Shown here one piece after another: positions 14,610-58,622 of a stretch of 64,000 nucleotides of DNA; the first letter of the stretch is position 1; every line of letters begins with the position of its first letter. The position numbers and the translations under genes are program-made. Below the pieces are notes generated by a model. It had not been told where the DNA came from, ran no database searches, and was given only the letters and a program-made list of their open reading frames with translations. This DNA is from Ostrea edulis (taxonomy: Eukaryota), in assembly GCF_947568905.1 (NCBI RefSeq), contig NC_079171.1, positions 42,780,001 to 42,844,000 of the forward strand. Direction: 5' to 3'.

Positions 14610-14656
<47 letters not shown>

Positions 14657-14870: not shown

Positions 14871-14874
<4 letters not shown>

Positions 14875-20652: not shown

Positions 20653-21962
20653 TCATGGGACACATATGTCTGGTAGCACGACATTTCCTGCAAATCCGTG
20701 ACCGTCGTTCTTTCTATGACCATATAACAGCAAGCCAAAGACTGCGTTGTTTGTCGTCTTGACGTTAATAGCGCCATCCGATACATGTACCATCAGAACA
20801 ATGCACCGAACTTTCCTCACTGTCACAGGAGTATGAAATGTCCTCATATACTCAGTTAAGCTTCTTTTGTTTAAGGTAAGGTGCGGTAACGAACTTTAGT
20901 CAATTATTAAAGCAACATAATTACTTGTAAAATTGCTAGGAGTAACAACTGTATATTCATTAAGGTACTGCGTTACCCCGGGTATGGTTATCATATAAGG
21001 ATCGCCTGACGTGTCTGATCCAGCAGCAAAACTGGTAAACAGAACGGGTCGTTCTGATTCAATAACTGCAACTTGGTTTTCAGTGATTGAGAATTCAAAG
21101 TATCCTTGTGGAACTAAAAACACTGTTGTTTTCTTATTGCCAACATGATATGTCACCCTGCTTTTAAAAGGCGACACAACTTTCAGAATTGTTCCGTGCC
21201 TGTTTATGTTTGGCGGGGCAATATACGTATTATCCAATCTATCTACTGGTGGGATTTGTTCAACAAGATGACTACAGAATCCAGAGTCGTTTCTATTTTT
21301 AAAAGCTATTTTTGCACATCTGTTCCCTGAAAACACAGCAACAATAGACGACGCTTTGATGAATGTTCCAGATAAATCAGCATTATGCCTGATTTGATAC
21401 GTCTCAAACTCATTTAAAACAATAACGAATTCACTACCATCCTGATACTCAATCCCATCAACAGTAAGTGGTAGATTGGGTTCAAATCGGAATATAATTC
21501 TAACTTCTGTAGATTTATTTAAGGCGGCTATTGCAAACTGAACATAGTTGTATGTTTGGTTCGAGTACTCAGGAGTAGATATTATATAAGTGTTAGATAG
21601 GTGTTTCACTGGCAAAACCATGGCGCTGTCCGAAGATATTTTGTAATCATCAATGATAATGACAGAAGCGTCGATTGTGGTCTCAATAAGTATAGCTTTT
21701 TCTTCTATCTTAAAATACGACAGCATCATCCTATTCGGAACATTTATGTTTTTGACATTTGCCATCTGCGTTTTAACTTTAATATAAGTGGAAGTGGAAT
21801 CTAAGGCTTTGTCAAAAATGTTCAACTCAAAATCTCTCTCCGCCACAATATACACCGACTTGTCTGTGTTTAAAGCATTCGGTAGATTTTCTAGGAAACA
21901 AATGAGGTATGTCTGGTGAGAAGCTCCTGTCAAAAATGCAGAATCTAGAATTTCATATTGCT
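20653..21962 (-). pseudogene. Copy A terminal exon: IgGFc-binding protein N-terminal (FCGBP-N) domain with a premature stop
   Basis: Motifs DLSGTFIKAS..VAVFSGN.C...CSHLVEQIPPV and GDPYMITIP...QY; acceptor cctag|AG at 21962; GAA>TAA at 20896-20898 followed by 80 further in-frame codons matching copies B and C. Confidence 0.88.
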
Positions 21963-23346
21963 CTAGGTATGTAAAATAGATGATGTAAAAATATAATACA
22001 TTCTATAAAGTACAAATGATTTTAAAATGAATGTTTGCGTTGCTTTACACGAATAAGGTTCACGTTAATATTGATAATAAAAATAAATCAATTGGTCTTT
22101 TGGTTTGACTTACCACTAGTGATTCGGGGTTTGATGTCAATAGTACCGAAATACTTGTTAGGGCAAACCACCTGTCTTTGATTTGTTCGTGCTTATAAAT
22201 AGATAATATTCAATTAAGCTGATAACAAAATCAATAAACAGAAAAAATACAAAAAAAAAAAAAACTACTTCAAAGCATTCTTTCTCTTTCTCTCCAACTT
22301 CAGTTTATTGATAAAAGGTTGCAGAACCCGTTTAGATCTGTGTTTACCAATCATTAATGTTATCAGTTAATAAATGCTTTTAACATTATATCGTATACAT
22401 GCTATGATTAAATATTGTACGTTATGACTGATAACTAAAATAACCGAGTTGTGGACCGTGTCTACTCCTTCGTTCGTCTGTATGTCATCTTTAGACACAA
22501 CGTTTGCACAAATGTTTTTAATACCATTAAGAAGGGACATTAGTTACATGTAATTTATATAGTTATACAGGTACATGTTTTGAATGCTGCACCGAAGATA
22601 CAATTTATCCTCATCTGAATTGCAAAAACTAGATATACTGCCTTTACCACCATTGGACTTGAGATAACCCGCTTATTGGGGTTTAAAAGTAGATAAATGC
22701 TATCCGTAATACGTTTGGCATAAATTTCCGATAAGCGATTAAGTAGGAGTTTTCTTTTCTTTTTTGCTTTCATAACTGTTGAGGCACTATTTACCTTTCG
22801 CTTTATGAATCTTTGTACACTACGCATTCATTCACTGTTAACTTTCATTATAAGGTAACCAGTTAACATATAAACTTCACTCGACGTTTACCAAAAGACT
22901 TATCAATTGGTAAGTGATAAAAAATGGGATTTTTTTTTTATTCTTGTTCAACTGTAAAGAAAAAAAGAGTACATAAGTACACTATTCTGCCTAAATAATT
23001 ATGAAACATGTTTCGTGTATTTTTGGGGTAAGTGTACTCTGCAAATGGATAGTACTACGACAAAATTACATCTAACATTTGCTGTTTATGGTTAAAGCTT
23101 TCTATTTTGATGTTTCATTGAAAGGAATGTAACATAAGTAGGTAAAGGAAGTTCAGTAAATCATACACAATGCGTGTTTAGAAACATATTTCACATTTGT
23201 TGAGGTTTAATAGTTGGATACTTATATTGGAAATTCCAATAAGTTAAATGAGATTGTAATGAAAATATTACAGATGAAGTTTTGGGAAAAATAAATCGTT
23301 GTGTATATAGTATATATATAAAGCTTTACATGCAAAATTGTGATAC

Positions 23347-23515
23347 CCTTTCCCTTTTGTTCCTGTTCCACGTTCTGTAGAATGAGAATGGATGACAGTA
23401 TGACGATGATTATTAGCACAACAATTAGTGCTATAACATAATTCCTCCTATTTTTCTTTTTCTTTGCAGCTGTATCGGTATGGGAAAAAACATCTGATTT
23501 GCATTCTGTTTTCAG
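23347..23515 (-). CDS. Copy A transmembrane exon (LKTECKSDVFSHTDTAAKKKKNRRNYVIALIVVLIIIVILSSILILQNVEQEQKGK)
   Basis: ttccag acceptor (phase 0), G|gtatca donor (phase 1), 169 nt; joins the terminal exon in frame (G+AG = Glu). Confidence 0.85.
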
Positions 23516-24748
23516 CTGGAATAGAAATATCACCGAGTTAGGATAGAAGTGTATAGGATATAAATAACCTGGGTATATGTTAGAGTTTCAAGCCACGCCC
23601 TATCAACTACGTGCAACGGTAGCAATTATTCATGGTGTGGATTTATTTTAAAATGAAGGCAAAGGTTATTGAAGAAATGTAGTTTAATGAAGAAAAAATT
23701 GTGAAATATGTTTCTGAAATAAATAGACCTCTCAGTATTATATCCTGTTTTGGAGTCTTTTCTAACTTTTGCGAGGGATTTCGAAATCAATCATTTAACT
23801 TTAAGAAACAATTTTGTCTTGATTCTCTAGCTGCAAGCATTAAACCGTAATGCTGGAGATATATCAGCGCTTCTTTGTGATGTTAGGTTTCCTTGATGTA
23901 TTTATTTGAATCTTGTTTTATCTCCATTAGAAACTCTTTCCCTGATACAGAAAGGTTACCAGCTGTGGATTTAATACCATAAATCATGACCAATGCATGA
24001 CACTCTGGTTGATTGCAAAGGGAGATTCTTTATCAAACCAAACCTTAACGTGATTCGGAATGTGAAAGAGTGAATGTATAGACATGCGATCAATCTCATA
24101 ATTCTTTAAAAACAAATATGAAATTAAGAGATTCAGAATAGCGCAAACGCCGCCCCTGGAGAACGAGAATATTTATACCCTGAAAGGTAGCAGAAAATGC
24201 TTTGGTGAAATAAGTAACTCATTTAGAATTATAGAAAAATCCAGCATCTGTTCAAATTCATAAATTCAAGAACTAAATAATTGTACAGGTAAATGAATGT
24301 AAATGTAAATGATTGTACAGTTAAATAATTGTACAGTTAGATAATTGTACAGATAAATAATAATACAGTTAAATAACTGTACAGGTAAATGATTGTACAG
24401 TAAAACAATTGTACAGTTAAGTAATTGTACAATTAAATAGTCGTACATGTAAAACTTGTTCAGGTAAATAAAAGTCGTATAAATAAAAATTATGCTGTTA
24501 AATAATTGCAGAGGTAAAACGTCTACAGGTAAAGAAGTGTACAAGTAAAAGATTGTACAGGCAAATAATTGTAGAGGTAGTTATATGTAGAATTAAAAAG
24601 TGTACAAATAAATAATTGTGTATTTTGATAATTGAATAGTGATAAAGATATAAATATAACGTCTGGAACACTCATGACATTTAAAATATATTTTTAATTT
24701 CACTTTTTAATGGTTTGAATGTTAAATGCCCTGTATCTCTCTCTGTTT

Positions 24749-24751
<3 letters not shown>

Positions 24752-24801
<50 letters not shown>
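24752..24801. repeat. (GA)n microsatellite
   Basis: Direct observation. Confidence 0.98.
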
Positions 24802-24804
<3 letters not shown>

Positions 24805-25181
24805 AGCAATGACCTTTTTAGTGACATCTGCAGACTCTGTGGTCTGGAGCTAACCCAGAGAGGTGTTTTGATAACAATAACAGCCAGTATCTACAGACAT
24901 TCTTTAGATCTTGAGGACGCCCAGTATACCTGATGTTTTGATACCATTGACCTGTCCACAAGTGATATTTTCTTGCAATTAAATTGTTTTTAAAAAGACC
25001 ACTGAACAATGCAATTTCAAAATAATTTTGATTGTTTCCCCTCTATACACATGTACATGTATTATAAATTACACAAACATAAATGAAAGAATAATTAGCA
25101 CAATGATATCTAAATCTTGTAACTTATTGAAATGATTTATGTCATCAATTTATGATACTTCTATATTAATAACCGAGATTA

Positions 25182-25332
25182 NNNNNNNNNNNNNNNNNNN
25201 NNNNNNNNNNNNNNNNNNNNNNNNNNNNNNNNNNNNNNNNNNNNNNNNNNNNNNNNNNNNNNNNNNNNNNNNNNNNNNNNNNNNNNNNNNNNNNNNNNNN
25301 NNNNNNNNNNNNNNNNNNNNNNNNNNNNNNNN
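25182..25332. other. N gap (151 nt)
   Basis: Run of N; the paralogous position (40840) is a (GA)n tract. Confidence 0.99.
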
Positions 25333-25461
25333 GGAATAGGAATACAACCATTATCCAAACACTATGACTACATATACTCTGGAGAGGTCCCTATGTATAT
25401 CAAAGCTATAAAAAAGCACAGACAGGTAGATTTCTACCATGTTCTGTCTCTGTGTATTTCT

Positions 25462-25610
25462 TTAAGTGTCATGGGATATGCTTACTCCTCCTAGGCACCT
25501 GATCCCACCTCTGGTGTGTTCAGGGGTCCGTGTTTACCCAATTTTCTATTTTGTATTGCTTATCGAAGTTATGAGATTGATCACTGTTCGTTATATTCAC
25601 CTTTCATATA
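25462..25610 (+). mobile_element. Penelope-like 3' end fragment
   Basis: atgcttactcctcctaggcacctgatcccacctctgg...; absent in unit B (about 41110). Confidence 0.6.
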
Positions 25611-26101: not shown

Positions 26102-26167
26102 ATCTGAATAGATTTGATCGTTCATTACAGTCAATGGAATCTGTAAATTGCCCTGGCAGGTTGTTGT
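26102..26167 (-). CDS. Copy A tail exon b (TTTCQGNLQIPLTVMNDQIYSD)
   Basis: ctattctgcag acceptor, gtaagt donor, 66 nt, phase 0-0. Confidence 0.75.
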
Positions 26168-26393
26168 CTGCAGAATAGAATTATGAAGTATTACGATAAA
26201 AGGACAAGAACAACGTAGCTTGTACTGTATTCACATCCCGGGAGGCGTAATTTCTGATCTCAGAGGGTAACAATGTGATATCGAAATGTTTTCAGAGCAA
26301 TTAGATTTGACTAAATTACATGCAAGTATAATGAAAATAAATAAATAAAAGAAATTCCTTCTGTCACAAAAAGTTATTGAATAGAACATTTAC

Positions 26394-26456
26394 ACCCGAG
26401 TAGATTTGATCTCTCATTACAGTCAATGACACATGTGCATTACCCTCCATTTTTAT
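26394..26456 (-). CDS. Copy A tail exon a (IKMEGNAHVSLTVMRDQIYSG)
   Basis: tttcattcggcag acceptor, gtaaat donor, 63 nt. Confidence 0.68.
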
Positions 26457-29562: not shown

Positions 29563-29770
29563 AAATTTAGAAAACCGTGTAATGTACTTTGTATCCAGTT
29601 CACTGGGATATATCCATTCAACATATGAAAAAAGTGAACGTTTATGTTTATAAAGTTTTAATTGACAATACTAGTAAAATGTAAGCATTTTGATCATCAG
29701 ACTTTTTATTGTCACACACTGTGATATATACTTGTATATTAGAATAAAATCTTGGAAGTAGAACACTTAC

Positions 29771-29836
29771 CTCTGAGGAGATGTAATCATTCACTACAAG
29801 CAATGGTTTACGTGTATTGTTCTTGGAAGTTGCCAT
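29771..29836 (-). CDS. Copy A exon c1 (MATSKNNTRKPLLVVNDYISSE)
   Basis: ttttgtag|ATG acceptor, GAG|gtaagt donor, 66 nt. Confidence 0.68.
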
Positions 29837-31242: not shown

Positions 31243-31308
31243 CTCTGAGGGGATGTAATCATTCAGTACAAGCAATGGTTTACGTGCATTGTTCTTGGGA
31301 GTTGCCAT
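31243..31308 (-). CDS. Copy A exon c2, a tandem duplicate (MATPKNNARKPLLVLNDYIPSE)
   Basis: ttttatag|ATG acceptor, GAG|gtaagt donor; part of a roughly 1.47-kb local duplication. Confidence 0.6.
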
Positions 31309-33530: not shown

Positions 33531-33589
33531 ATTACATCAGAGACCATGTGGACTTTTGAAGAGGGAGTGGAAAGAATTTACTAGTAGAA

Positions 33590-36744: not shown

Positions 36745-38054
36745 TCATGGGACGCATGTGTCCGGTAGCACGACATTTCCTGCAAATCCATGACCGTCGT
36801 TCTTTCTATGACCATATACCAGTAAGCCAAAGACTGCGTTGTTCGTTGTCTTGACGTTAATAGTGCCATCCGACACATGTACCCCCAAAACAATGTACCG
36901 AACTTTTCCTACTGTCACGGGAGTATGAAATGTCCTTATATACTCAGTTAAGCCTCGTTTGTTTAAGTTAAGGTGAGGTAACGAACTTTCTTCAATTATT
37001 AAAACAATATAATTACTTGTAAAATTGCTAGGAGTGATAACTGTATATTTGTTAAGGTACTGCGTGACACCGGGTATGGTTATCATATAAGGATCGCCTG
37101 ACGTGTCTGATCCAGTGGCAAAACTGGTTAAAAGAACGGGTCGTTCTGATTCAATAACAGCAACTTCGTTTTCAGTGATAGAGAATTCAAAGTATCCTTG
37201 TGGAACTAAAGACACTCTTGTTTTCTTATTGCCAACACGATATGTCACCCTGCTTTTAAAAGGCGACACAACTTTCAGAATTGTTCCGTACCTGTTTATG
37301 TTTGGCGGGGCAATATACGTATTATCCAATCTATCAACAGGTGGGATTTGTTCAACAAGTTGACTGCAGGCTCCAGAATTATTTCTGTTTTTGAAAGCTA
37401 TTTTTTGACAACTATTTCCTGAAAACACAGCAATATTAGACGAAGCTTTTATGAATGTTCCAGATAAATCAGCATTATGCCTGATCTGATACGTCTCAAG
37501 CTCATTCAAAGCAATAACCATTTCACTGCCATCCTGATACTCAACCCCATCAACAGAAAGTGTTAAATTGTGTTCAATACGGAATATAATTCTAACTTCT
37601 GTAGAGTTATTTAAGGCGGCTATTGCAAACTGAACCCTATGGTATTTTCTATTGAAATACTCAACACTTGATATTATATAGGTGTCGGATAGGTGTTTCA
37701 CTGGCAAAACCATGGTGCTGTCAGAAGATAATTTGTAATTATCAATAATAATGACGGCAGCGTCAAGTGTGGTTTCTATAAGTATAGCCTTTTTTTCTGC
37801 CTTAAAATACGACAGCATCATCGTATACGGAACATTCATCTTTTTGACCTTCGCCATCTTTGTGTTAACTTCGATGTAAGTGGAAGTGGAGTCTAAGTCT
37901 TTCTTAAAAATGTTCAGCTCAAAATCTCTCTCCGCCACAATGTAGACCGACTTGTCTGTTTTTGGAGCATTGTCATGATTACTAGAGAAACAAATCAGGT
38001 ATCTCCGGTGGATATTTTCTGCCAAAAATACAGAATCTAGAATTTCATATTGCA
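36745..38054 (-). CDS. Copy B terminal exon: FCGBP-N (IgGFc-binding) domain; frame open but splice acceptor altered
   Basis: 449-aa ORF, paralog of A and C; the homologous acceptor reads cagag|TG instead of cctag|AG. Confidence 0.85.
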
Positions 38055-39435
38055 CTCTGTATACAACATCATTGATATTAAAAATGTGGTACATTGTTTA
38101 TAGTACAAATGATATTGAGACGTTTTTTGCGTTGCTCTATTAAAATAAAACCCATGTTAGCATTGTATGGTACAAATAGACCATTGCTCTTTTGGTTTGA
38201 CTTACCACTAGTGTCTCGTGATTTGATGTCAATAGTACTGAAAGGCTTGTTAGGGCAAACCAACTGTCTTTGATTTGTTTGTGCTGATAAATATATAATA
38301 TATAAATAAGTTGATAACAAAATAAATAAGTCAATAAACAGAAAAATGCAAAGAATAAAAACTGTTTAAAAGCATTCTTTCTCTCGCAACTTCAGTTTAT
38401 TGATAAAATGTTGCAAAATCCTTTTAGATCCGTGTTTACCAATCATTAATGTTATCAGTTAATAAATACATTTAACATCATATCTTATACATGCTTTGAT
38501 CAAATGTTGTACGTTATGAGTGATCACTAATAACCGAGTTGTGGACTGTATCTGCTTTTTCGTTCGTCAGTATGTGATCTTTAGACACAACGTTTGCACA
38601 AGTGTGTTTGATACCATTATGAAGGACATTAGTTCCATGTATTTTATATAGTAATACAGATACATATTTTGAATGCTGCATTGAAGCTACAATTTATCCT
38701 CTTTTGAATTGCAAAAACTAAATGTATGCATTTACCACCATTGAACTTGAGATAACCCGCTTTCTGAGGTTTAAAAGTGTATAAATGCTATCCGTAATAA
38801 GTGTGGCATAATTTTCGGATAAGCAGTTAAGTGGCAAAATTTTCTCACTTTTGCTTTTATAACTGTTGAGGCACTATTTACCTGTCACATTATGAATCGT
38901 TGTACACTACGCATTCATTCACTGTTAACTTTCATTATAAGGTAACCAATAAACATATAAACTTCACTCGAAGTTTACCAAAAGACTTATGAATTGGTAA
39001 TGGATAAAAAGGGATTTTTTAAAAAAAAAATTTTGTTCAACTGTAAAGAATAAAGAGAGTACATATGTACACTATTCTGCCTAAATAATTATGGAACATG
39101 TTTCGTGTATTTTTGGGGTAAGTGTACTCTGCAAATGGATAATATTACGACAAAATTACTTCTAACATTTGCTGTTTATGGTTAGGGTTTTCTATTTTGA
39201 TGTTTCATTGAAAGGAATATAACATAAGTAGGTAAAGGAAATTCAGTAAATCATACACAATACGTGTTTATAAACATATTTCACATTTGTTGAAGTTTAA
39301 TAATTGGATATTTATTTTGGAATTTCCAATAAGTAAAATGAGATTGTAATGAAAATATTACAGATGAAGTTTTGGGAAAGATACATCGTTGTGTGTGTAG
39401 TATAGATATAATGCTTTACATGCAAATTGTGATAC

Positions 39436-39607
39436 CCCTTTCTCTGTGTTCCTGTTCCACGTTCTGTAGAATGAGAATGGATGACAGTATGCCGATGATG
39501 ATTATTAGCACAACAATTAGTGCTATGACATAATTCCTCCTATTTTTCTGTTTCTTTGCAGCTGTGTCGGTATAGGAGAAAACATCTGATTTGCATTCTG
39601 TTTTCGG
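39436..39607 (-). CDS. Copy B transmembrane exon (PKTECKSDVFSYTDTAAKKQKNRRNYVIALIVVLIIIIGILSSILIL...)
   Basis: ttgcag acceptor, G|gtatca donor, 172 nt (3n+1). Confidence 0.85.

Positions 39608-40836: not shown

Positions 40837-40839
<3 letters not shown>

Positions 40840-40901
<62 letters not shown>
40840..40901. repeat. (GA)n microsatellite
   Basis: Direct observation. Confidence 0.98.
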
Positions 40902-40909
<8 letters not shown>

Positions 40910-41818: not shown

Positions 41819-41881
41819 ATCCGAGTAGATTTGATCTCTCATTACAGTCAATGATATATGTGCATTGTCCTCCATAGTTAT
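41819..41881 (-). CDS. Copy B tail exon a (ITMEDNAHISLTVMRDQIYSD)
   Basis: ttttattcggcag acceptor, gtaaat donor, 63 nt. Confidence 0.68.
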
Positions 41882-44800: not shown

Positions 44801-45008
44801 AAATTTAGAAAACCATGTAATGTCCTTTATACCCAGTTCACTGGGATATATCCATTCAACATATGAAAAAAGTGAACGTTTATGTTTATAAAGTTTTAAT
44901 TGACAATACTAGTAAAACGTAAGCATTTTGATCATCAGACTTTTTATTGTCAGACACTGTGATATATACTTGTATATTAGAATAAAATCTTGGAAGTATA
45001 ACACTTAC

Positions 45009-45074
45009 CTCTGAGGAGATGTAATCATTCACTACAAGCAATGGTTTACGTGTATTGTTCTTGGAAGTTGCCAT
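45009..45074 (-). CDS. Copy B exon c1 (MATSKNNTRKPLLVVNDYISSE)
   Basis: Same peptide as A c1; ag|ATG and gtaagt intact. Confidence 0.68.
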
Positions 45075-46469: not shown

Positions 46470-46535
46470 CTCTGAGGAGATGTAATTATTCACTACAAGC
46501 AATGGTTTACGTATATCGTTCTTGGAAGTTGCCAT
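46470..46535 (-). pseudogene. Copy B exon c2 with a destroyed donor (GAG|ataagt)
   Basis: MATSKNDIRKPLLVVNNYISSE is open, but the GT donor has become AT (46469). Confidence 0.6.
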
Positions 46536-49283: not shown

Positions 49284-49451
49284 GAACGGTTTGCACAGGA
49301 CAGTGAACAGTTTGCAAGGAACTATGAATGGTTTGCACAGGACAGTGAACGGTTTGCATGGGGCGGTGAAAGGTTTACACAGGACAATGAACTGTTTGCA
49401 CGGAACTATGAAAGGTTTGCACAGGACAGCGAACGGTCTGTACGGAACGGA
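49284..49451. repeat. 21-bp minisatellite x8 with 42-bp higher-order alternation
   Basis: gaacggtttgcacaggacagt-type units; units 1, 3, 5 and 7 share cacaggaca. Confidence 0.9.
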
Positions 49452-50589
49452 AATAAACGCTTTGGAGGTTTAACAGTACGTTTCAGGGTCTGTAGATTTT
49501 TTTTGCTAAGTGATTGGCTACTTCATTCAGTTTTTCACTTAAAACTCATTCAAGTACCTTAAAGCTTCAGGATGCTTGGTACACTGTTGAATCCTTCAAA
49601 TTCAAGATTTCTTAGTTTCGTTGATGGGTTAGTTTGTGATATGGTTTCTGTGTGTTGACAAATTATATATGATGTGTTCTTCGTTTTGGTTTCAACTTCG
49701 TTGATAATGGTAGCCATGAACTCCCGAGAAAATGTGTCCAACGAAATTTAGTGGCTCTAAAGCATTACGTGTACATTCATTTAATCATCTGCTGATCAAG
49801 TGATTTTATTCACATTATTTGTATAGTTAATGAACATTTATGGTATACAATATAAGAGTCGCTTATGAATAGCCATGAAATATAAGGCATTTTACAATGC
49901 CGAGGGTTGTACCCAGAGACGCCATTTTGAGAATATTCAAATTGATTAAATTTTCACTATAGATTAAAACTGACCCTAGGATCGGATTCTACGACCTTAA
50001 TTTTGGCAACTACGTTGCTGACAGAAATTCAACCGATTAATGATTGAGTGAATAGTATTAGAGTTATTCCTCTTTGAATAAAAACAACTGTAGATAACTA
50101 ACATGCCTACACACACACAAAATAGTACTTGTAATTTTACTGATTCATTAATCATGCATATAAAAATTTAGATATAAACCTTAATATCAATAACTTTAAG
50201 TATAGGAAATATTAAACTGACACGTAATACATTTTATACTTTCGACCTAAATCAATATCGGGCTGACGCATGACATCATTTGGCCTACATGTGTTGGAAA
50301 CTATTTTAATTGAGCGCGGAATCATCTGATCTTCTACCAAGTATCAGTTAAGTATAATCAAAATCGCACGAGTTTTTTTTCAAAGGAGCGTTGACACTAA
50401 TATTAAATACACAGTTATTTAACAACGAGTGTGTACACTGAGATTCAGAGTGGTTTTTGTTAGTGAACATAGACATGTATTTTACTTTTGTTTCCAAATG
50501 GCCAAAACTATATTGGAGGCACTTGTTACATTAAAGACAGATGTAGATGTTGGAAGAGGGAGAACGAAGCATTTACTAGTAGAAATGTA

Positions 50590-50790
50590 GAGATGCCATA
50601 AAATTAGAAAAATATATATCAAGTTCACTGGACATTTGGGCGAGGGATTGTTGACTGAATCACATGATTTTCTCTCGTGAGTAATTTAAGATGACTGGCT
50701 GTTTTCATCAATGTTTTCTTATTTTCAGTAGCTTCTATGAAGTCATCGTCGTTTAAAAGCCGAAATCTCGAGGATGATGAACATCTTGTT
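50590..50790 (-). mobile_element. Crypton-like N-terminal relic
   Basis: SRFRLLNDDDFIEATENKKTLMKTASHLKLL... Confidence 0.45.
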
Positions 50791-51399
50791 GTCATGATTA
50801 AGCAGACGAAATAAATATTCACCCGGATAATTATGTCACGTGATATGGAAGATATATATGTATAAATATCTTTCATACATTTCTGTCATATGATATCTGT
50901 ATATTACATACGCTAATCCACGTATTCCAAGGTAAACATGGACTTCAAGATTGTAAACTCGCAAAGGGCAACCTCATCTGATGTATCAGCACCTCCATCA
51001 AACATTGAGAGAGAAACTAATGAGACACCGTCACAGAGAACATATATCATCCCAATTAGATCATGAGTCATTGAACACAATATTATCCGTTATCTCACAA
51101 CTGTTAATCTCCAAAGAACGTGAGCCAGTAGGCACACATTCTGTTAATAGAAACACAATAATTTTTTTCTGTTACCAACTCTGACCCCCAATTAGCTAAA
51201 TCAAAGTAGCACGCCACAACTCCCAGTCAGTTTTTTACAGAAAACTGTCTCTTGGTGCAACAGTATCAACTAAAATTAAAAGAAAATTGCGTACAGAAAT
51301 CATGCCCCACCAAAATGATCGTCCCCTGCTCTGTAGGTGATCAATGTACAGTGCAAAAACGTTCATGTCACTTATTCATCAGTAGTAAAGTTCAACATC

Positions 51400-52330
51400 A
51401 TCCATTAGAAGCCCCCAATCTACTCAAGTATACGAGTTTCATTAGAAACAGTCTGCATTGCGATGCTGCATGATGGACTTATGACGAGTCCTTTAGAAAA
51501 CGGAAGGAATAATTTTGTTTTCTATGACAAAAGTCCATAGGGGAATGAAGAAGGAAATATATTGCTATGACATTGAAACTAAATTCTGGGAAGCCCTTTC
51601 ATGGAGAAGAAATGGGAAGAGTCCGAATTTGCTTCGCATTCAATCAAGGGAAAGGTGCAGACACAACTCATGCTACTTTTCGTACTCTTGTCAATCGTGC
51701 AGGGGACAACGGCAAGAATATGATTGCTCATTCCCATCCCAAATAGATACGAAACTCAGAGTTAGCAACTCCAGTAAAACAAGACGTACTAAATAGGAAA
51801 TACAATGGGTACAGCGCAGACATAGGGTCTAATTTCGTAAATGAGATAAAACATATATTTTCCATCGGTTGCAATCCAACTCCTATCTCTGCCACAACAT
51901 ACAACCATAGTTCAGTTTTATAACATAAGGATCTCACATTTAAAGGATTCCAAACAATAATGACAATGCTTGTTTTCGATGCCCATCCTTTGCATTAATT
52001 GTATCATACCTTTTACGCTTTGCTCCGGAGTCTGCGCCAGGAAAGTGCAGAATAATCATTGATCTCTCTTATCCGAAAGATTCTTCTGTCAATACCCAGA
52101 GAAAACCCAATAGTGTATTATTGCACAAGTGATTATTCAACTAATTCAGAATTATGGAGATTTCTACTCAATAGCAAAAATAAAAAGAACCCGGATATAT
52201 AGGATACATTTGAAAAGTTCCTGTTAACCCATCTGACTATCATATATAAGGTTTTTCTAAAATGTTGAGTTGGTTTGACGTTTAATTTATATTACCAATT
52301 ATCAGATGACGTCCTCCTTCAGCTCGTGAA
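51400..52330 (+). mobile_element. DIRS/Ngaro-like retrotransposon relic (Gag-like end plus RT start)
   Basis: LLKYTSFIR...DAA*WTYDESFRKRK; CFAFNQ...CRHNSCYFSYSCQSC zinc-finger-like run; GKCRIIIDLSYPKDSSVN; IQLIQNYG; PVNPSDYH. Confidence 0.7.
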
Positions 52331-52557
52331 AGAGTGCGAACTTATGCGGGTTGCATAAACACAATAACGTACAGGAAGAATTTTATGTCTAAAACATAAT
52401 TTGTTGTTAAAAAAGATAGTATTTACCAATGATATCGTATTATGTCATACACCTAACTCAGAATTTTATTTGTTTTGTAAGCCTAATGCATTTATAAATT
52501 TCATATCCCTTTAACAACGACAAAATAATGCGTACTAATGAAAACCGCTAATCATGT

Positions 52558-52870
52558 GAGGTGAAGATAACGAACAGTGATCAATCTCATAACTCCTACA
52601 AGCAATACAAAATAGATAATTGGGCAAACAAGGACTCCTGGACACACCAGAGGTGGGATCAGGTGCCTAGGAGGAGTAAGCATGCCCTGTTGACCGGTTA
52701 CACCCGCCGTGAGCCCCGTATCCTGATCAGGTAAACGGAGTTATCCGCAGTCAAATCAGTGTGTCTAGAACGGCTTAACAATCGGTATGAAACACGTCAG
52801 ACAGCATTTGATCCAATGCGAGGTTGTATTCACGAACTAGATCGTTATAACGACCATAGAATTTGCGACA
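52558..52870 (-). mobile_element. Penelope-like 3' fragment (young)
   Basis: Same family as 33204-33530; empty site in unit A at about 35185. Confidence 0.7.
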
Positions 52871-54121
52871 GTGAAGTGTGAATCGGTATTTATTGAAATG
52901 GCAATATATATAAGAAATACAATCAAAGAGGAGATCATATCAAACAAGTTTTCTTTGGTGTACAAAAGCAACCTTCCGTGTTACAATATAATGCATGTTA
53001 GAGATATCACTTTCAAGTCAACAAGTTTATATGGTATGGCATACATGCAGAAAAAATGTCATTCAAAATATTTTTTAAAAAACCCACAGAAAGCAAAAAG
53101 AAAAAGAAACCGCTTGTCAACCACAAACTACCGTTGTGACAATGATATATTTACATTTCATAATATATTTACCGAAACCCTTTTAACTACAATTCATAGA
53201 ATATTTACCAAAACACTGTTGTGACGATGATGTATTTACATTTCATAAAATGTTTACCAAAACACTTTTAACTACAATTGATAACATACTTACAAAAACA
53301 ATTTTAACTACAATTCATCAAATATTAACAAAAACACTTTTATTACGATATTGTACTTACATTTCATAGAATATTTAAAAAAAAACAAACAATGTCATGT
53401 CAATGATATATCCATATTTCAATTATTATTTACAAATAACACTGATATCTATATTTCATAAAATATTCATCAAAACAATGTTGTGACAATGCTATGCTTA
53501 CATTTCATGAAATATGTACCAAAACAATCTTATGACAATGCTATGCTTACATTTCAAAGAATATTTACCAAAATAATTTCATCTCCATGATATATCCATA
53601 TTTCAAAAATTATTTACAAATAACACTGATATCTACATTTCATAACATGTTATGACAATGCTATATGTACATTTGAAAAAAAAAATTATTCCGTTATGGC
53701 CTAGTATATACCCTGGGTCTATCTTTACCCGGTTGACCGTGAATAAATATCTAATTGCATGCGATATCTGATTAAGAAAAAAATTCATATCAACCAAGAA
53801 ACAAAACTCTTCTTACATTTAAATCTACACAGCAATGACGGACAATTGTCTGTATAACCTACCTTATTGTGTTTGAAGAGGTAGACTAACGTAGACTATG
53901 GTATGAGGAGCACTAGTCAAGTGGTTAAAGGAAGTGAACATGAAAATGTGAGAAAGGGTTTAAATTTGTCATTTTGATGTATATAATGAATTCTGAAAAT
54001 CAATAAGGTGTAGCTTTCTTTAGTAGGGTGATATTTCATAAAGATTAACGAATCTTTTCAATCCTTGGGAGCTACCATATTGAAAAAAATATTACCTCCC
54101 AGCTGGGTTATCTCTTAGCAT

Positions 54122-54137
54122 CCACTAGAGGGCAGCA
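54122..54137 (+). promoter_or_regulatory. CTCF-consensus-like motif CCACTAGAGGGCAGCA
   Basis: Sequence match to the bilaterian CTCF core; function untested. Confidence 0.35.
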
Positions 54138-54200
54138 CTGATGCTGATGTCAGTTGGACACATTGTGTATTTTTGGTACATTGTAAGCATCAACGTTAAA

Positions 54201-54790
54201 ATGTCATCAGCAGAAAGTGAATTAAATATGGGATATCAGTTTGAACCTGATGTTACAGAGGAAGAAATTGTTTCTCAGAATAATTCTTCTTTACCAGCAA
54301 TTTATTTTAATGAGAGAGGAATTATGTATATTCAAGGGTGTCTTTCTTGTCATGAGTTTGAACATTTTGTGTCAGATTACATGGATATACACATAAAAAG
54401 CAATTCTCTACACCCATATTTTGACATGGTGTGTCTAAGTCCTGTTATAATTGATACAGCTTACATTTATCCATGGATTTATGAATCCAGAGAGGAAGGG
54501 TCTCAGAGGACTTGGATAACAACTTGTTTAACAAGTAAGAAAAACACGAAAATGAAAATACCTTCTGTATTCACATGTATTAAAATCTAAACATAACATG
54601 GTATTTCCAATTACACACACACGTGATAGAATACAGTAACAATTCTGTTGCAGGCATGTTATCAAGTTTTATGGTCTACAGACAGTTTATCAACTACATT
54701 TTGTAGGTCAGACGCGGTCAGCCTCTTGGGGGGAAAATCAGAGTAGTTTTATCCTCATTTGTTGTGACATAAATTATGGGAGCATTTCTT
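54201..54790 (+). pseudogene. P2X7-ballast-like (KolX-type) transposon accessory protein, degraded
   Basis: N-terminal GYQFEP; LHPYFDMVCLSPVIIDTA; downstream piece YRQFINY...LGGKIRVVLSSFVV*..F matching the AYRQF..W...LG..R..IPSC...IR..FP pattern. Confidence 0.65.
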
Positions 54791-55837
54791 AAAATCACTG
54801 CAATTAGAAAGAATTTCTTGAAACCTTAGATTTTGATACAGATTCAGAATAAGTAATTTTTATTAGTGTAAATAAATAATATAACTGTAAATTGCATCTC
54901 CGAAATTCATCTCTGGTCCATATACATCAATTATTGTAAAATATATCAATTGTATGCCTATATTGCAGTACTTTTATGACACAGTCACCTTAATTATCTC
55001 CAAATACTTTAAAATCTAATCAAATTAATTAATTTGGAATCTTGAAATATAACAGTACTATAGTGCTTCTGAGTAAGTTCAGAAGTTGGAGGAACTGGAT
55101 ATATTTTGTGGGAGTGTTTTCTTTTTTATCTTAATGCATTGTAATTAGATTTGATTTCAATTCTTTTTGCTCCAAAACCTTATCCATCAATTCTAATATG
55201 AATCCAATAAATTTCTGCTGTATAATAGTGACCCAGTCAACAACAGCAATGTGTCTCATCTACGTCAGAGCACAGATGCATACTGGGAAATAATGGATGA
55301 CCTCCATAAACCTTCAACTTAGAGTGTTTAATTGATCAAATCTCGTAATAGAAACAAGCAAATTAAATTCAGGCCAAACTATTTAGTTGCAGGAGGTCTT
55401 CTAAGTTTATTACGGAACATATATTTTTAACATGTTCACTTCCTTTAATGTTTCTTACTGATGTTATTGATAGTTTCAAATTCTCCACGTGGAAGTAAAC
55501 TATATTCATAACTATATATTTAGCACCTGGGATTCTGTGTGATATATCAAACATGATACACATAGTTGTTCCTTTCTCCTCTTTACACGTCATATCGTAC
55601 CCTAACGTTGCCTTTGATATCAACAACAGTGTATAATATACAGTAATACTAATTTCATTCAGGTAAAAGGAAATCAAATAAAGTATGTATTGACATATTT
55701 TGGGCACAGTACATGGTACGACAAAGGCGATACAGAATGGATATATGTTTTTTCTTATACAATGTATTTATATATGATATTTTCATGGTTTAATCAACAT
55801 GTTGAAGAAATCGACATATATCCATTATCTGTGGTGA

Positions 55838-57147
55838 TCATGGGACACATACGTCCGGTAGCACGACATTTCCTGCAAATCCATGACCGTCGTTCTTTCT
55901 ATGACCATATACCAGCAAGCCAAAGACTGCGTTGTTAGTCGTCTTGACGTTAATAGCGCCATCCGATACATGTACCACCAAAACAATGTACCGAACTTTC
56001 CTCACTGTCACAGGGGTATTAAATGTTCTCATATACTCATTTAAGCCTCTTTTGTTTAGGGTAAGGTGCGGTAACGAACTTTCGTCAATTATTAAAGCAA
56101 CATAATTACTTGTAAAATTGCTAGGAGTAACAACTGTATATTTGTTAAGGTACTGCGTTACCCCGGGTATGGTTATCATATAAGGATCGCCTGACGTGTC
56201 TGATCCAGCGGCAAAACTGGTTAAAAGAACGGGTCGTTCTGATTCAATAACTGCAACTTGGTTTTCAGTGATTGAGAATTCAAAGTATCCTTGTGGAACT
56301 AGAGACGCTGTAGTTTTCTTATTGCCAACATGATATGTCACCCTGCTTTTAAAAGGCGACACAACTTTCAGAATTGTTCCATACCTGTTTGTGTTTGACG
56401 GGACAATATACGTATTATCCAATCTTTCAACTGGTGGGATTTGTTCAACAAGATTACTACAGGCTCCAGAGTCCTTTCTGTTTTTAAAAGCTATTTTTGC
56501 ACATGCGTTCCCTGAAAACACAGCAACACGAGACGACGCTTTTATGAATGTTCCAGATAAATCAGCATTATGCCTGATCTGATAAGTCTGAAGTTCATTC
56601 AAATAAATAACCATTTCACTACCATTTTCATACTCAATCCCATCAACAGTAAGTGGTAAATTTGGTTCAATTCGGAACATAATTCTAACTTCTGTTGAGT
56701 TATTTAAGGCGGCTATTGCAAACTGAACACGGTCCAATTTTGGATTGAAACTACTAACAGTTGATATTATATAGGCATCGGATAAATGTTTCATTGGCAA
56801 AACCATGGTGCTGTCCGAAGATAATTTGTCATTATCAATAATAATTACAGAAGCGTCGATTGTGGTCTCAATAAGTATAGCTTTTTCTTCTATCTTGAAA
56901 TACGACAACATCATCGTATATTGAACATTTATCTTTTTGACATTTGCCATCTGCGTTTTAACTTCAATGTAAGTGGAAGTTGAGTCTAAGGCTTTGTTAA
57001 AAATATTAAGCTCAAAATCTCTCTCCGCCACAATGTACACCGACTTGCCTGTGTTTGCATCATCGTCATAATTATAAGGGAAACAAATCAGGTATCTCTG
57101 ATGATAAGTTCCTGCCAAAAATGCAAAATCTGGAAATTCATATTGCT
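55838..57147 (-). CDS. Copy C terminal exon: FCGBP-N (IgGFc-binding) domain, intact
   Basis: actag|AG acceptor at 57147; open frame to TGA at 55838; N-glycosylation sequons (NNST, NGSE, NFTS) and the conserved Cys pair. Confidence 0.9.
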
Positions 57148-58446
57148 CTAGTTATGTAAGATAAATAATTTAAAAAATATAATGCATTCTATAAAGTACA
57201 AATAATCTAATTTTTGCGTTGCTTTACACGAATATAGTTCATGTTGATATTGATGATATAAATAGATCAATTGGACTTTTAGTTTGACTTACCACTAGTG
57301 ACTCGTGGTTTGATGTCAATAGTACGGAAAGGCTTGTTAGGGCAAACCAACTGTGTTTGAGTTGTTCGACCTACTAAATATATAATATTTAATCAAGCTG
57401 ATAGCCAAATAAATAAGTCAATAAACTGAAAAATACAAACATTAAAAACTACTTAAAAGCATTCTTTGTCTTTCACCCCAGTTTATTGATAAAAAGCTGC
57501 AAAACCCTTTTAGATCTGTGTTTTACCAATCATTAATGTTATCAGTTAATAAATGCATTTAACATCATATCTTATATATGCTATGATTAAATATTGTACG
57601 TTATGAGTGATAACTAATAATCGAATTGTGGACCGTGTCTACTCCTTCGTTCGTCTGTATGTCATCTTTAGACACAACGTTTGTACAAGGGATTTTAATA
57701 CCATGCATCCTCTTTGGAATTGCAAAAACTAAATATGTGCCTTTACCACCATTGAACTTGAGATAACCCGCTTACTGAGGTTCAAATGTAGATAAATGCT
57801 ATCCGTAAAACGGTTGGCCTAATTTTCGGATAAGCAATTAAGTGGGAAAATGTTCTCACGTTTAATTTCATAACTGTTGAGGCATTGTTTACCTATCGCT
57901 CTATGAATCTTTGTACACTACGCATTCATTTACTGTTAACTTTCATTATAAGGTAACCAATAAACATATAAACTTCACTCGAAGTTTACCAAAAGACTTA
58001 TGAAATAGTAATTAATAAAAAAAAGAGATTTTTTAGAATTCTTTTTCAACTGTAAGGAATAAAGGGATAGTACAGAAGTACACTATTCAGCCTAAATAAT
58101 TATGGAACATGTTTCGTGAATTTTGGGGGTAAGTGTACTCTGCAGATGGGTAATAGTACGACAAAATTACATCTAACGTTTGCTGTTTATGGTCAATGCT
58201 TTCTTTCTTATGTTTCGTTGAAAGGAATATAACATAAGTAGGTAAAGGAAGTTCAATAAATCATACACAATACATGTTTAGAAACATATTTCACATTTGT
58301 TGAGGTTTAATTGTTGGGTACTTATTTTGGAATTTCCAATAAGTAAAATGAGATTGTAATGGAAATATTACAAATACAGTTCTGGGAAAGATGCATCGTT
58401 TTGTGTATAGTATATATAAAACGCTTTACATGCAAAATTGTGATAC

Positions 58447-58622
58447 CTTGTTCCCCATGTTCCTGTTCCACGTTCTGTAGAATGAGAATGGATGACAGTA
58501 TGCCGATGATGATTATTAGCACAACAATTAGTGCTATGACATAATTCCTCCTATTTTTCTTTTTTTTTTTTTGCAGCTGTATCGGTATGGGAGAAAACAT
58601 CTGATATACATTCTGTTTTCAG
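58447..58622 (-). pseudogene. Copy C transmembrane exon with a +4 nt frameshift in a poly-A run
   Basis: 176 nt versus 172 in B; 13-A run at 58560-58572; reading from the acceptor hits TAG at 58551-58553. Confidence 0.75.

What the first reader, a model, noticed from the sequence alone, without database searches (positions are those of the whole stretch)
20653..58622. Tandem family of type II membrane proteins with a single extracellular FCGBP-N domain
In vertebrates the IgGFc-binding N-terminal domain belongs to a large secreted mucus protein (FCGBP). Here it is a stand-alone C-terminal ectodomain on one roughly 1.3-kb exon, spliced in phase 1 to an exon encoding a polybasic stop-transfer and a roughly 21-residue hydrophobic helix, with no signal peptide and no vWD/TIL repeats. 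Together with the tyrosine tail, the layout parallels type II lectin-like receptor clusters (NKG2/Ly49/Dectin-1), suggesting an invertebrate recognition-receptor family.
Basis: partly seen in the sequence, partly recalled or inferred. Interest (0 to 1): 0.75.

Follow-up and report, generated by a model that had tools for sequence, protein, structure and literature searches.

The report
Oyster membrane-anchored FCGBP-N gene cluster
A tandem cluster of flat-oyster genes encodes (or once encoded) cell-surface proteins that are anchored by their front end and display one copy of the poorly understood "IgGFc-binding N-terminal" domain. The genes are real but already machine-annotated, only one of the three copies in the window is intact, and an immune-receptor role is still only a hypothesis.

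Summary
The core observation holds. Three minus-strand paralogues in Ostrea edulis (OX387711.1, about 42.78-42.84 Mb) each end in a roughly 1.27-kb exon with a full-length Pfam IgGFc_binding match (E 1e-44 to 9e-49). About 1.4 kb upstream of each lies an exon encoding a polybasic run and a 22-residue hydrophobic helix. There is no signal peptide and no vWD or TIL domain.

Corrections:
- The helix exon is not joined directly to the terminal exon. A 78-nt, phase 1-1 exon encoding a cysteine-bearing stalk lies between them. It is in the RefSeq model and conserved in Saccostrea.
- Only copy 2 is intact. Copy 1 has an in-frame TAA. Copy 3 has a frameshift in an A13 run; its near-identical twin just left of the window has A12 and is in frame.
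- The 151-N run lies in an intron of copy 1, and its flanks are colinear with copy 2.
- The RNA-supported tail of copy 2 (exon 1 joined to the helix exon in one spliced contig) has two tyrosines but no YxxL/I motif.

Type II FCGBP-N proteins also occur in Saccostrea, Crassostrea and Mytilus, some with ITAM-like tails, a C-type lectin fusion, or type II fibrinogen-domain neighbours. This is a real, undescribed variant of a known domain family. The receptor function is inferred, not shown. The same scan's finding s1-279150 covers the tail mini-exons.

The parts
36745..38018 (-). Copy 2 terminal exon (phase 1 start, stop codon at 36747-36745). It encodes the 423-residue ectodomain with the FCGBP-N domain and is intact.
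   Evidence: ORF. PF17517 match with E 9e-49. 100% identical to RefSeq protein P0001. Acceptor site shown.
38206..38283 (-). Copy 2 stalk exon: 78 nt, phase 1-1, 26 residues with a Cys-Pro-Asn motif.
   Evidence: Present in P0001. Has AG/GT splice sites. A homologous 69-nt phase 1-1 exon exists in Saccostrea echinata. The cysteine is conserved across the subfamily.
39436..39607 (-). Copy 2 signal-anchor exon: 172 nt, phase 0 to phase 1. It encodes the end of the tail, the polybasic run and the 22-residue helix.
   Evidence: Hydropathy peak 3.36 at residues 50-68 of P0001, with 5 Lys/Arg before the helix and 2 after. Predicted as a helix at residues 46-82. A contig from run X11 covers 39522-39609 with no mismatch and continues into exon 1.
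45009..45074 (-). Copy 2 exon 1A coding part: 66 nt, begins with the ATG, ends in phase 0.
   Evidence: First 22 residues of P0001. Splice sites. The 137-nt loose end of the X11 contig matches 45011-45040 exactly.
41819..41881 (-). Copy 2 candidate 63-nt phase 0-0 tail mini-exon. Neither the RefSeq model nor the one spliced contig uses it.
   Evidence: nhmmer hit and clean AG...GTAAAT boundaries. Skipped by the X11 contig.
46470..46535 (-). Copy 2 duplicate first exon 1B, with its donor changed to ATAAGT. Probably dead.
20653..21926 (-). Copy 1 terminal exon. An in-frame TAA at 20898-20896 removes the last 80 residues.
   Evidence: PF17517 match stops at profile position 239 of 297. dN/dS against the other copies is 0.36-0.45, so the break is recent.
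22114..22191 (-). Copy 1 stalk exon (78 nt, phase 1-1).
23347..23515 (-). Copy 1 signal-anchor exon (169 nt, in frame, one codon shorter within the helix).
25182..25332 (.). Run of 151 N inside the intron between copy 1's signal-anchor exon and its tail exons.
   Evidence: Flanks are colinear with copy 2, where about 149 bp of GA-rich repeat lie at the same place. Not filled and not looked up.
26102..26167 (-). Copy 1 candidate 66-nt tail mini-exon. If used, it would form YxxL across the junction with the helix exon.
   Evidence: No RNA evidence.
26394..26456 (-). Copy 1 candidate 63-nt tail mini-exon.
   Evidence: No RNA evidence.
29771..29836 (-). Copy 1 exon 1A (ATG exon). Its coding sequence is identical to that of copy 2's exon 1A.
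31243..31308 (-). Copy 1 duplicate ATG exon 1B.
55838..57111 (-). Copy 3 terminal exon, intact.
   Evidence: (E 2.2e-47).
57293..57370 (-). Copy 3 stalk exon (78 nt, phase 1-1).
58447..58622 (-). Copy 3 signal-anchor exon: 176 nt, with an A13 run. Entered in phase 0 it hits TAG before the helix. Only an internal ATG at 58600 is in frame with the helix.
   Evidence: The twin copy left of the window has A12 (175 nt) and is in frame.
11977..15327 (-). Tail exons of the copy whose body lies just left of the window ('copy 0'): 15327-15262 (ATG exon), 12330-12268 and 12042-11977.
   Evidence: This is the subject of earlier finding s1-279150.

Best explanation
The span holds three units of a larger tandem cluster of oyster paralogues. 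When intact, each encodes a single-pass type II (N-terminus inside, C-terminus outside) membrane glycoprotein.

Gene layout, 5' to 3':
- One or more small phase-0 exons (63-66 nt) build a short, modular, acidic, tyrosine-containing cytoplasmic tail.
- One exon encodes the polybasic flank and a 22-residue signal-anchor helix.
- A 78-nt phase 1-1 exon encodes a stalk with a subfamily-specific cysteine.
- One 1.27-kb exon encodes an all-beta ectodomain of about 420 residues, built around the FCGBP-N (PF17517) domain.

The most likely function is a cell-surface binding or adhesion receptor that holds the FCGBP-N module above the membrane, possibly as a disulfide-linked dimer through the stalk cysteine. 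The cluster evolves by duplication and decay.

Shown: the domain identity; the exon structure and its conservation in Saccostrea; the exon 1 to helix-exon junction in one spliced contig; the breaks in copies 1 and 3; the presence of the architecture in other bivalves.

Inferred: the topology, glycosylation, dimerisation, surface location, ligand binding, and any signalling or endocytosis through the tail.
For: - Domain: PF17517 full-length hits in all three copies, and it is the only Pfam family in the full-length protein.
- Annotation: RefSeq protein P0001 (529 aa, Ostrea edulis) is 100% identical to copy 2 and maps to four coding exons.
- RNA: an X11 contig joins 39522-39607 to exon 1A across 5.4 kb.
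- Conservation: Saccostrea echinata has the same layout of small tail exons, helix exon, 69-nt phase 1-1 Cys-Pro-Asn exon and 1.29-kb terminal exon.
- Topology: one hydrophobic segment at residues 48-70, 47 residues from the N-terminus, with 5 Lys/Arg before it and 2 after. The AlphaFold2 model shows a helix at 46-82 and a confident all-beta ectodomain, mean pLDDT 81.6. There are five N-x-S/T sites in the ectodomain. A Saccostrea relative carries a C-type lectin domain C-terminal to the same domain.
- Cysteines: C309 and C323 are conserved family-wide; C89 (stalk), C115 and C527 are specific to the subfamily. That gives an odd number in the ectodomain.
- Selection: dN/dS is 0.36-0.45 and dS 0.19-0.27 between copies.
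- Cluster extent: further units lie left (L001) and about 37 kb right (L002) of the window.
- Other bivalves: type II forms occur in Saccostrea, Crassostrea/Magallana and Mytilus.
Against: - Only one of the three copies in the window is intact as assembled.
- No reads or contigs covered the helix-exon to stalk-exon to terminal-exon junctions in O. edulis. These rest on the RefSeq model and on conservation.
- Run X11 is not on record as RNA. Its RNA nature is inferred from the spliced contig.
- Topology was not predicted with a dedicated program and has not been shown experimentally.
- The FCGBP-N domain has no known ligand. The human domain did not bind IgG (PMC8267560), and its role is stated to be unclear (PMC11796319).
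- No solved structure resembles the whole ectodomain.
- The supported tail of copy 2 has no recognised sorting or signalling motif.
Confidence: 0.65

Rival explanations
1. One reading: these are innate immune recognition receptors that work like the vertebrate NK-complex type II lectin-like receptors. The FCGBP-N ectodomain would bind a microbial or altered-self ligand, and phosphorylated tail tyrosines would recruit SH2-domain kinases or phosphatases.
For: - The layout is type II with a stalk cysteine, in a tandem cluster that includes broken members.
- Amino-acid differences between copies concentrate in the N-terminal third of the ectodomain.
- Saccostrea orthologues carry YxxL-x8-YxxI in the tail. 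The pattern is conserved in two species and appears in about 1% of shuffled tails.
- One Saccostrea member adds a C-type lectin domain.
- In Crassostrea the type II FCGBP-N gene is flanked by type II fibrinogen-domain genes, which have been merged into single models.
- The candidate mini-exons of copies 0 and 1 would create YxxI/L motifs.
Against: - The ectodomain is not a C-type lectin-like domain.
- The supported tail of the intact copy has no YxxL/I, ITIM or ITAM motif.
- The helix has no charged residue that could pair with an adaptor.
- Tyrosine spacing in the O. edulis modules would be about 22 residues, not ITAM spacing.
- There is no expression, challenge or binding evidence. dN/dS below 1 shows no overall positive selection.
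Confidence: 0.2
2. The membrane anchor is only a delivery device. The ectodomain would be released by cleavage in the stalk and act as a soluble mucus, adhesive or matrix component, like the secreted oyster proteins annotated as IgGFc-binding protein-like.
For: - In vertebrates the domain sits in a secreted mucus protein (PMC11796319, PMC8267560).
- Oyster relatives with a signal peptide, EGF, TSP1 or CUB modules look secreted.
- Secreted C. gigas IgGFc-binding protein genes form a tandem cluster expressed at larval settlement (PMC6337334).
- The stalk is basic and predicted to be disordered, with pLDDT below 50 at residues 82-104.
Against: - The conserved tail exons and tail motifs in Saccostrea, and the conserved stalk cysteine, would not be expected for a mere leader.
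- No recognisable furin-type site was looked for or found.
- There are no proteomic data.
Confidence: 0.15
3. The 'family' in this window is mostly wreckage. One working gene (copy 2) would be surrounded by decaying duplicates, and some apparent copies or defects would come from assembly duplication or homopolymer error.
For: - Copy 1 has a premature stop and copy 3 a frameshift.
- Unit L002 has frameshifts and has lost the stalk cysteine.
- Exon 1B of copy 2 has a dead donor.
- Window 1-5360 equals 58653-64000, and the unit left of the window is 99.96% identical to 45839-59841. Two of the five differences are homopolymer length changes.
- RefSeq gives only truncated models for the copy 3-type gene (P0002, 370 aa) and for L002 (P0013).
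Against: - dN/dS of 0.36-0.45 in all pairs, including the broken copies, means they were under constraint until recently.
- The twin of copy 3 has an in-frame helix exon.
- Splice sites and phases of all small exons are kept in all copies.
Confidence: 0.25

Closest known systems
Human FCGBP N-terminal domain (FCGBP-N1; Pfam PF17517 IgGFc_binding)
   Same: It is the same domain family: a full-length profile match and the family-wide cysteine pair.
   Different: FCGBP is a giant secreted mucus protein with a signal peptide and 13 vWD assemblies. Here the domain stands alone on a type II anchor, with no vWD, C8 or TIL. The human domain's function is unknown and it does not bind IgG (PMC8267560, PMC11796319).
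Secreted oyster 'IgGFc-binding protein-like' genes (for example the C. gigas CGI_10010553-57 cluster and C. virginica P0021)
   Same: Same domain, same animals, tandem clusters, and a single large exon for the domain (PMC6337334).
   Different: Those proteins have a signal peptide and EGF, vWD or other extracellular modules, and are predicted to be extracellular. The window's genes have a cytoplasmic tail, a signal anchor and a cysteine stalk.
Type II FCGBP-N proteins of other bivalves: Saccostrea P0008-P0010, P0038, P0050; Crassostrea gigas P0070 and P0194; Mytilus P0094 and P0180
   Same: Same architecture of tail, signal anchor and FCGBP-N ectodomain. For Saccostrea the exon layout and stalk cysteine also match.
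   Different: Their tails are longer and carry YxxL/I motifs, with ITAM-like spacing in two Saccostrea proteins. The Mytilus forms insert EGF repeats, and one Saccostrea form adds a C-type lectin domain. All are machine annotations, and I found no paper on them.
NK-complex type II C-type lectin-like receptors (NKG2, Ly49, Dectin-1, CLEC-2)
   Same: Type II orientation, a short tail, a membrane-proximal stalk cysteine, and tandem clusters with pseudogenes.
   Different: The ectodomain fold is unrelated, and the supported O. edulis tail has no ITIM, ITAM or hemITAM. This comparison rests on general knowledge of those receptors, not on a test made here.
Bacterial PF17517 proteins with type IX secretion C-terminal domains (gliding-motility-associated surface proteins)
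   Same: Same domain displayed on a cell surface (P0037, P0044, P0047).
   Different: They are bacterial and anchored or secreted through a C-terminal CHU_C domain, with PKD repeats. Identity is only 22-28%.
Lingula anatina 'IgGFc-binding protein' P0030
   Same: A single FCGBP-N domain on a single-pass membrane protein in a lophotrochozoan.
   Different: The orientation is opposite: the domain comes first and the helix is near the C-terminus (type I-like).

Membership tests
Pfam PF17517 IgGFc_binding (FCGBP-N) domain family | Profile match above the curated gathering score, covering the whole model | tested here: met
   166.8, 162.2 and 153.1 bits against a cut-off of 25.6. Profile positions 1-297 are covered in copies 2 and 3, and 1-239 in copy 1, which is cut by the stop. 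P0001 residues 205-508 match.
Pfam PF17517 IgGFc_binding (FCGBP-N) domain family | Family-wide conserved cysteine pair and neighbouring conserved core motifs | tested here: met
   C309 and C323 align with cysteines in 18 of 19 diverse members. The invariant Gly, Ala and Phe columns are kept.
FCGBP / gel-forming mucin-like secreted proteins | Cleavable N-terminal signal peptide | tested here: not met
   There is no hydrophobic segment in the first 47 residues. The only one is at residues 48-70.
FCGBP / gel-forming mucin-like secreted proteins | Repeated vWD-C8-TIL assemblies | tested here: not met
   PF17517 is the only Pfam family found in P0001 at E up to 0.01.
Type II (signal-anchor) single-pass membrane proteins | One uncleaved hydrophobic helix of about 20 residues, well away from the N-terminus | tested here: met
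   Kyte-Doolittle 19-residue peak of 3.36 at residues 50-68, and no other peak above 1.6. Modelled as a helix at residues 46-82.
Type II (signal-anchor) single-pass membrane proteins | Positive-inside charge bias placing the N-terminus in the cytoplasm | tested here: met
   5 Lys/Arg and 1 Asp/Glu in the 15 residues before the helix; 2 and 3 in the 15 after it. The same bias appears in most of the Saccostrea relatives.
Type II (signal-anchor) single-pass membrane proteins | Experimentally shown N-in / C-out orientation at the cell surface | not testable with these tools
   This needs tagged expression, glycosylation mapping or protease protection. No dedicated topology predictor was available.
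NK-complex-type type II lectin-like receptors (NKG2, Ly49, Dectin-1) | C-type lectin-like ectodomain | tested here: not met
   P0001 has no Lectin_C match. Only the Saccostrea relative P0015 has one, added after the FCGBP-N domain.
NK-complex-type type II lectin-like receptors (NKG2, Ly49, Dectin-1) | ITIM, ITAM or hemITAM in the tail, or a charged residue in the helix for adaptor pairing | tested here: not met
   The P0001 tail has no YxxL/I, ITIM or ITAM pattern, and its helix has no charged residue. ITAM-like patterns exist only in Saccostrea P0008 and P0009.
NK-complex-type type II lectin-like receptors (NKG2, Ly49, Dectin-1) | Tandem multigene cluster with intact and broken members | tested here: met
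   There are three units in the window plus L001 and L002. A stop, frameshifts and a dead donor were found.
NK-complex-type type II lectin-like receptors (NKG2, Ly49, Dectin-1) | Disulfide-linked dimer through stalk cysteines | tested here: inconclusive
   The ectodomain has an odd number (5) of cysteines, with a subfamily-specific stalk cysteine. The pairing is not known.

The most novel reading that the evidence does not exclude
Bivalves may have built, independently of vertebrates, a rapidly turning-over complex of type II surface receptors. In this reading, interchangeable ectodomains (FCGBP-N, fibrinogen-related, C-type lectin) sit on a common chassis of signal anchor and cysteine stalk. 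Their cytoplasmic tails would be assembled from duplicated 63-66-nt phase-0 exons, each bringing one tyrosine motif, so that signalling strength could be tuned by exon number or alternative splicing. The FCGBP-N domain, whose function is unknown in any organism, would then be a pattern-recognition module.
Probability: 0.15. Interest if true: 0.75.

Novelty: new variant of a known kind. Interest (0 to 1): 0.42.

Why it matters
The FCGBP-N domain occurs from bacteria to humans: 3,689 representative clusters at E up to 0.001. Yet it has no known ligand, function or solved structure. A small, single-domain, membrane-displayed form is a far more tractable object for binding and structural studies than the 5,400-residue human mucus protein.

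For oyster biology, a lineage-specific cluster of surface proteins showing duplication and decay is a reasonable candidate for host-microbe or self/non-self interactions. It sits in a species whose culture is limited by the parasite Bonamia.

The practical results here are a corrected gene model (the extra stalk exon and the tail exons) and a statement of which copies are broken.

Tried and rejected
- **Reads.** The helix-exon to stalk-exon to terminal-exon junctions therefore could not be tested. The four runs on record as RNA hold only about 10% of the terminal exon's sampled words, and X1 laid nothing.
- **Solved relatives.** A sequence search of the PDB gave no hit at E up to 1. The Foldseek PDB matches are meaningless: TM-score about 0.1, rmsd about 40 A, generic strings of beta-sandwiches. 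The wide VIA search gave only sub-domain resemblances: Z 9.2 to TM1070 for residues 333-425, and Z 5-6 to pilin or MSCRAMM sandwiches for residues 103-213. I draw no function from them.
- **The 58611 ATG.** I considered that this tyrosine-rich frame inside the helix exon is the tail. I rejected it because the frame is closed by TAG in all three copies.
- **Direct splicing.** I considered direct splicing of the helix exon to the terminal exon. It is phase-compatible, so exon skipping cannot be excluded, but the stalk exon is in the RefSeq model and conserved in Saccostrea.
- **The N runs.** I considered that they are assembly gaps. For 1190-1386, locus L001 from the same record holds 197 letters at that place, exactly the N length, so it looks like a mask. 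I did not read or use those letters. For 25182-25332 I have only the colinearity of the flanks.
- **Literature.** Searches found nothing on membrane-anchored FCGBP-N proteins.
- **Steps not run.** I did not build or search joined (spliced) conceptual proteins for copies 0, 1 and 3; exons were handled one by one by reference, and only the tool-returned RefSeq protein P0001 was used whole. The third word search for homologues was not used.

Full report
**What is in the sequence.**

The window is Ostrea edulis chromosome record OX387711.1, about 42,780,001-42,844,000. I derived this from locus L001, which overlaps window 1-8299 at 100%.

The minus strand carries three long ORFs at 20896-21933, 36745-38094 and 55838-57118. 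All three match Pfam PF17517 (IgGFc_binding) at E 1.3e-44 to 9e-49. Copies 2 and 3 cover the whole 297-position profile.

A self-comparison shows that the three lie in repeat units of 16-19 kb, 83-93% identical over most of their length. The tandem family and the domain call are therefore real and far beyond chance.

**Gene model.**

A word search returned RefSeq protein P0001 (529 aa, 'IgGFc-binding protein-like [Ostrea edulis]'), which is 100% identical to copy 2. Mapped back exon by exon, it uses four coding exons on the minus strand:

| Exon | Coordinates | Size and phase | Encodes |
|---|---|---|---|
| 1A | 45074-45009 | 66 nt, ends phase 0 | ATG and start of the tail |
| Signal-anchor exon | 39607-39436 | 172 nt, phase 0 to 1 | end of tail, polybasic run, helix |
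| Stalk exon | 38283-38206 | 78 nt, phase 1-1 | 26 residues with Cys-Pro-Asn |
| Terminal exon | 38018-36745 | phase 1 start | ectodomain |

The stalk exon has intact AG/GT boundaries and an open frame in all three copies. Saccostrea echinata has a homologous 69-nt phase 1-1 exon in the same position, between a helix exon and a 1.29-kb terminal exon. I take it to be a constitutive exon.

**RNA evidence.**

One contig from run X11 (225 nt) covers 39522-39609 without a mismatch. It then continues for 137 nt that match the 3' end of exon 1A exactly, at 45011-45040; the same letters also occur in copy 1's exon 1A. That is a spliced junction across 5.4 kb. It confirms the RefSeq exon 1 to helix-exon join and shows that the candidate mini-exon at 41881-41819 was skipped in that molecule.

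X11 is not on record as RNA; I infer that it is from the splice. Nothing was laid over 37801-39400. The two downstream junctions therefore rest on the RefSeq model and on conservation, not on reads.

**The N run.**

The run at 25182-25332 lies in copy 1's intron, between the helix exon (23515-23347) and the tail exons (26102 upward). Its flanks (24856-25173 and 25336-25478) align in order and orientation with copy 2 (40494-40810 and 40960-41119). Copy 2 has about 149 bp of GA-rich repeat where copy 1 has 151 N. The two sides therefore look continuous, and no reading frame crosses the run.

For another N run (1190-1386), locus L001 holds exactly 197 letters at the same place, so at least that run is a mask of true length. 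I did not read those letters and filled nothing.

**State of the copies.**

- Copy 2 is intact.
- Copy 1 has an in-frame TAA at 20898-20896, which removes the last 80 residues. Its other exons are in frame.
- Copy 3's helix exon is 176 nt because of an A13 run. Entered in phase 0, it reaches TAG before the helix; only an internal ATG at 58600 is in frame with the helix.

Window 1-5360 repeats 58653-64000. The unit just left of the window (L001, 'copy 0', RefSeq P0002) is 99.96% identical to 45839-59841, with five differences in 14 kb. One of the five is A12 instead of A13, which puts copy 0's helix exon (175 nt) in frame. Copy 3's defect may therefore be a very recent slippage or a homopolymer error.

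A further unit about 37 kb to the right (L002, RefSeq P0013) has frameshifts and has lost the stalk cysteine.

Between copies, dS is 0.19-0.27 and dN/dS is 0.36-0.45, including the broken ones. Amino-acid differences are densest in the first 130 codons of the terminal exon. This agrees with the scan's note s1-279385.

**The protein.**

- P0001 has one hydrophobic segment, at residues 48-70, which is 47 residues from the N-terminus. There are 5 Lys/Arg in the 15 residues before it and 2 after it. By the positive-inside rule this is a signal anchor with the N-terminus in the cytoplasm, not a stop-transfer sequence.
- The ectodomain has five N-x-S/T sites.
- It has five cysteines. C309 and C323 are conserved family-wide. 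C89 (stalk exon), C115 and C527 are specific to the Ostrea/Saccostrea type II subfamily. An odd number with a stalk cysteine suggests a covalent dimer; this is inference.
- AlphaFold2 with 32 homologues gave mean pLDDT 81.6. It shows a helix at 46-82, a disordered stalk at 82-104, and a confident all-beta ectodomain at 105-520.
- No solved structure is related by sequence. Fold searches gave only sub-domain resemblances.
- The papers on FCGBP say the human N-terminal domain does not bind IgG and that its role is unclear (PMC8267560, PMC11796319).

**The tail.**

An nhmmer search with the exon-1 family found ten related phase-0 exons of 63 or 66 nt, all with splice sites.

- ATG-bearing copies: 15327-15262, 29836-29771, 31308-31243, 45074-45009, and 46535-46470 (donor dead).
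- Internal copies: 12042-11977, 12330-12268, 26167-26102, 26456-26394 and 41881-41819.

This is the array described in finding s1-279150. If used, the internal exons would give YxxI/L motifs in copies 0 and 1, spaced about 22 residues apart. That is not ITAM spacing.

The RNA- and RefSeq-supported tail of copy 2 has two tyrosines but no YxxL/I, ITIM or ITAM pattern. The tyrosine-rich frame opened by the ATG at 58611 is closed in every copy. The 'tyrosine tail' is therefore weak for the one intact, supported isoform.

It is stronger in relatives. Saccostrea P0008 and P0009 share YxxL-x8-YxxI, a pattern that occurs in about 1% of shuffled tails. All Saccostrea tails also keep a membrane-proximal acidic Yxx(I/L/M) motif.

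**Survey of relatives.**

An exhaustive phmmer search found 3,689 representative clusters at E up to 0.001, and 64 at E up to 1e-30. I screened the fetched relatives by hydropathy and domain position. Type II forms occur in:

- Ostrea;
- Saccostrea (P0008-P0010, P0038, P0050, P0191);
- Crassostrea/Magallana (P0070, P0194, P0197, P0199);
- Mytilus (P0094/P0202, and P0180, which has EGF repeats).

Two further observations bear on function:

- One Saccostrea member adds a C-type lectin domain at the C-terminus.
- In Crassostrea angulata, a merged 1,533-residue model strings together three helix-plus-ectodomain units, with ectodomains fibrinogen-C, FCGBP-N and fibrinogen-C. The type II FCGBP-N gene therefore lies between type II fibrinogen-domain genes.

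Other oyster relatives are secreted forms with EGF, TSP1, CUB or mucin-like parts. Lingula has a form with the helix after the domain. Most other hits are fragments and could not be classified.

**Reading.**

The best-supported explanation (0.65) is a cluster of type II surface glycoproteins that display one FCGBP-N module on a cysteine stalk, evolving by duplication and decay. The function is binding or adhesion at the cell surface.

The immune-receptor reading (0.2) gains indirect support from the company the architecture keeps: lectin-type domains on the same chassis, and ITAM-like tails in Saccostrea. It fails the membership tests for NK-complex receptors and has no functional evidence.

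Shedding into mucus (0.15) and 'mostly pseudogenes' (0.25) remain open. Both overlap the main reading.

**Novelty.**

The genes are already in RefSeq as machine models: full-length for copy 2, truncated for the others. Similar models exist in other bivalves. I found no paper that describes membrane-anchored FCGBP-N proteins. I class this as a new variant of a known domain family, of moderate interest.

I did not build or search joined conceptual proteins for copies 0, 1 and 3.

Noticed in passing
window 1-5360 and 58653-64000; L001:7111-21113 against window 59841-45839: A higher-order repeat of 58,652 bp is almost identical to itself (100% and 99.975% inside the window, 99.96% over 14 kb outside). 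Two of the five differences are homopolymer lengths. It is either a very recent segmental duplication or an assembly duplication.
   Followed up: partly
window 1190-1386 (also 59842-60026): Locus L001 from the same record holds exactly 197 letters where the window has 197 N. This N run therefore looks like a deliberate mask rather than an assembly gap. The letters were not read.
   Followed up: partly
window 3404-4439 and 62044-63079, minus strand: A Tc1/mariner-type transposase ORF (HTH_Tnp_Tc3_2 E 2e-13, DDE_3 E 1e-6) sits in the long intron upstream of the copy 0 and copy 3 helix exons. This explains why that stretch is unlike copies 1 and 2, and why GC rises to 0.43.
   Followed up: partly
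window 24274-24619, 59374-59720 and 723-1068: A 16-bp satellite of about 22 copies at 70% match lies about 750 bp upstream of the helix exon in copies 1, 3 and 0. It gives a spurious 174-aa ORF.
   Followed up: no
window 29665-32176 and 44903-47411: The ATG-bearing first exon lies inside a tandemly repeated block of 0.5-0.7 kb. Each gene therefore has two first-exon copies (1A and 1B). Copy 2's 1B has a dead donor.
   Followed up: partly
window 40401-41400: Contigs from runs X9 and X10 pile up here at summed depths above 1,000, while the exons have none. This is probably a high-copy repeat in the intron.
   Followed up: no
L002 (OX387711.1:42871442-42892677), about 37 kb right of the window: This is a further unit of the cluster. 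It has an intact-looking helix exon, a stalk exon whose cysteine has become tyrosine, and a frameshifted terminal exon. RefSeq models it as a 255-aa protein (P0013).
   Followed up: partly
P0192 and P0193 (Crassostrea angulata, about 1,530 aa); P0198 (C. gigas): These merged RefSeq models string together type II fibrinogen-domain and type II FCGBP-N units, each with its own helix. Type II fibrinogen-related proteins with tyrosine-rich tails are therefore direct neighbours of the Crassostrea FCGBP-N gene.
   Followed up: partly
P0048 (Ambystoma mexicanum, 7,017 aa): An axolotl protein has 17 separate stretches matching the FCGBP-N ectodomain. This is a very different, highly repeated use of the same domain.
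   Followed up: no
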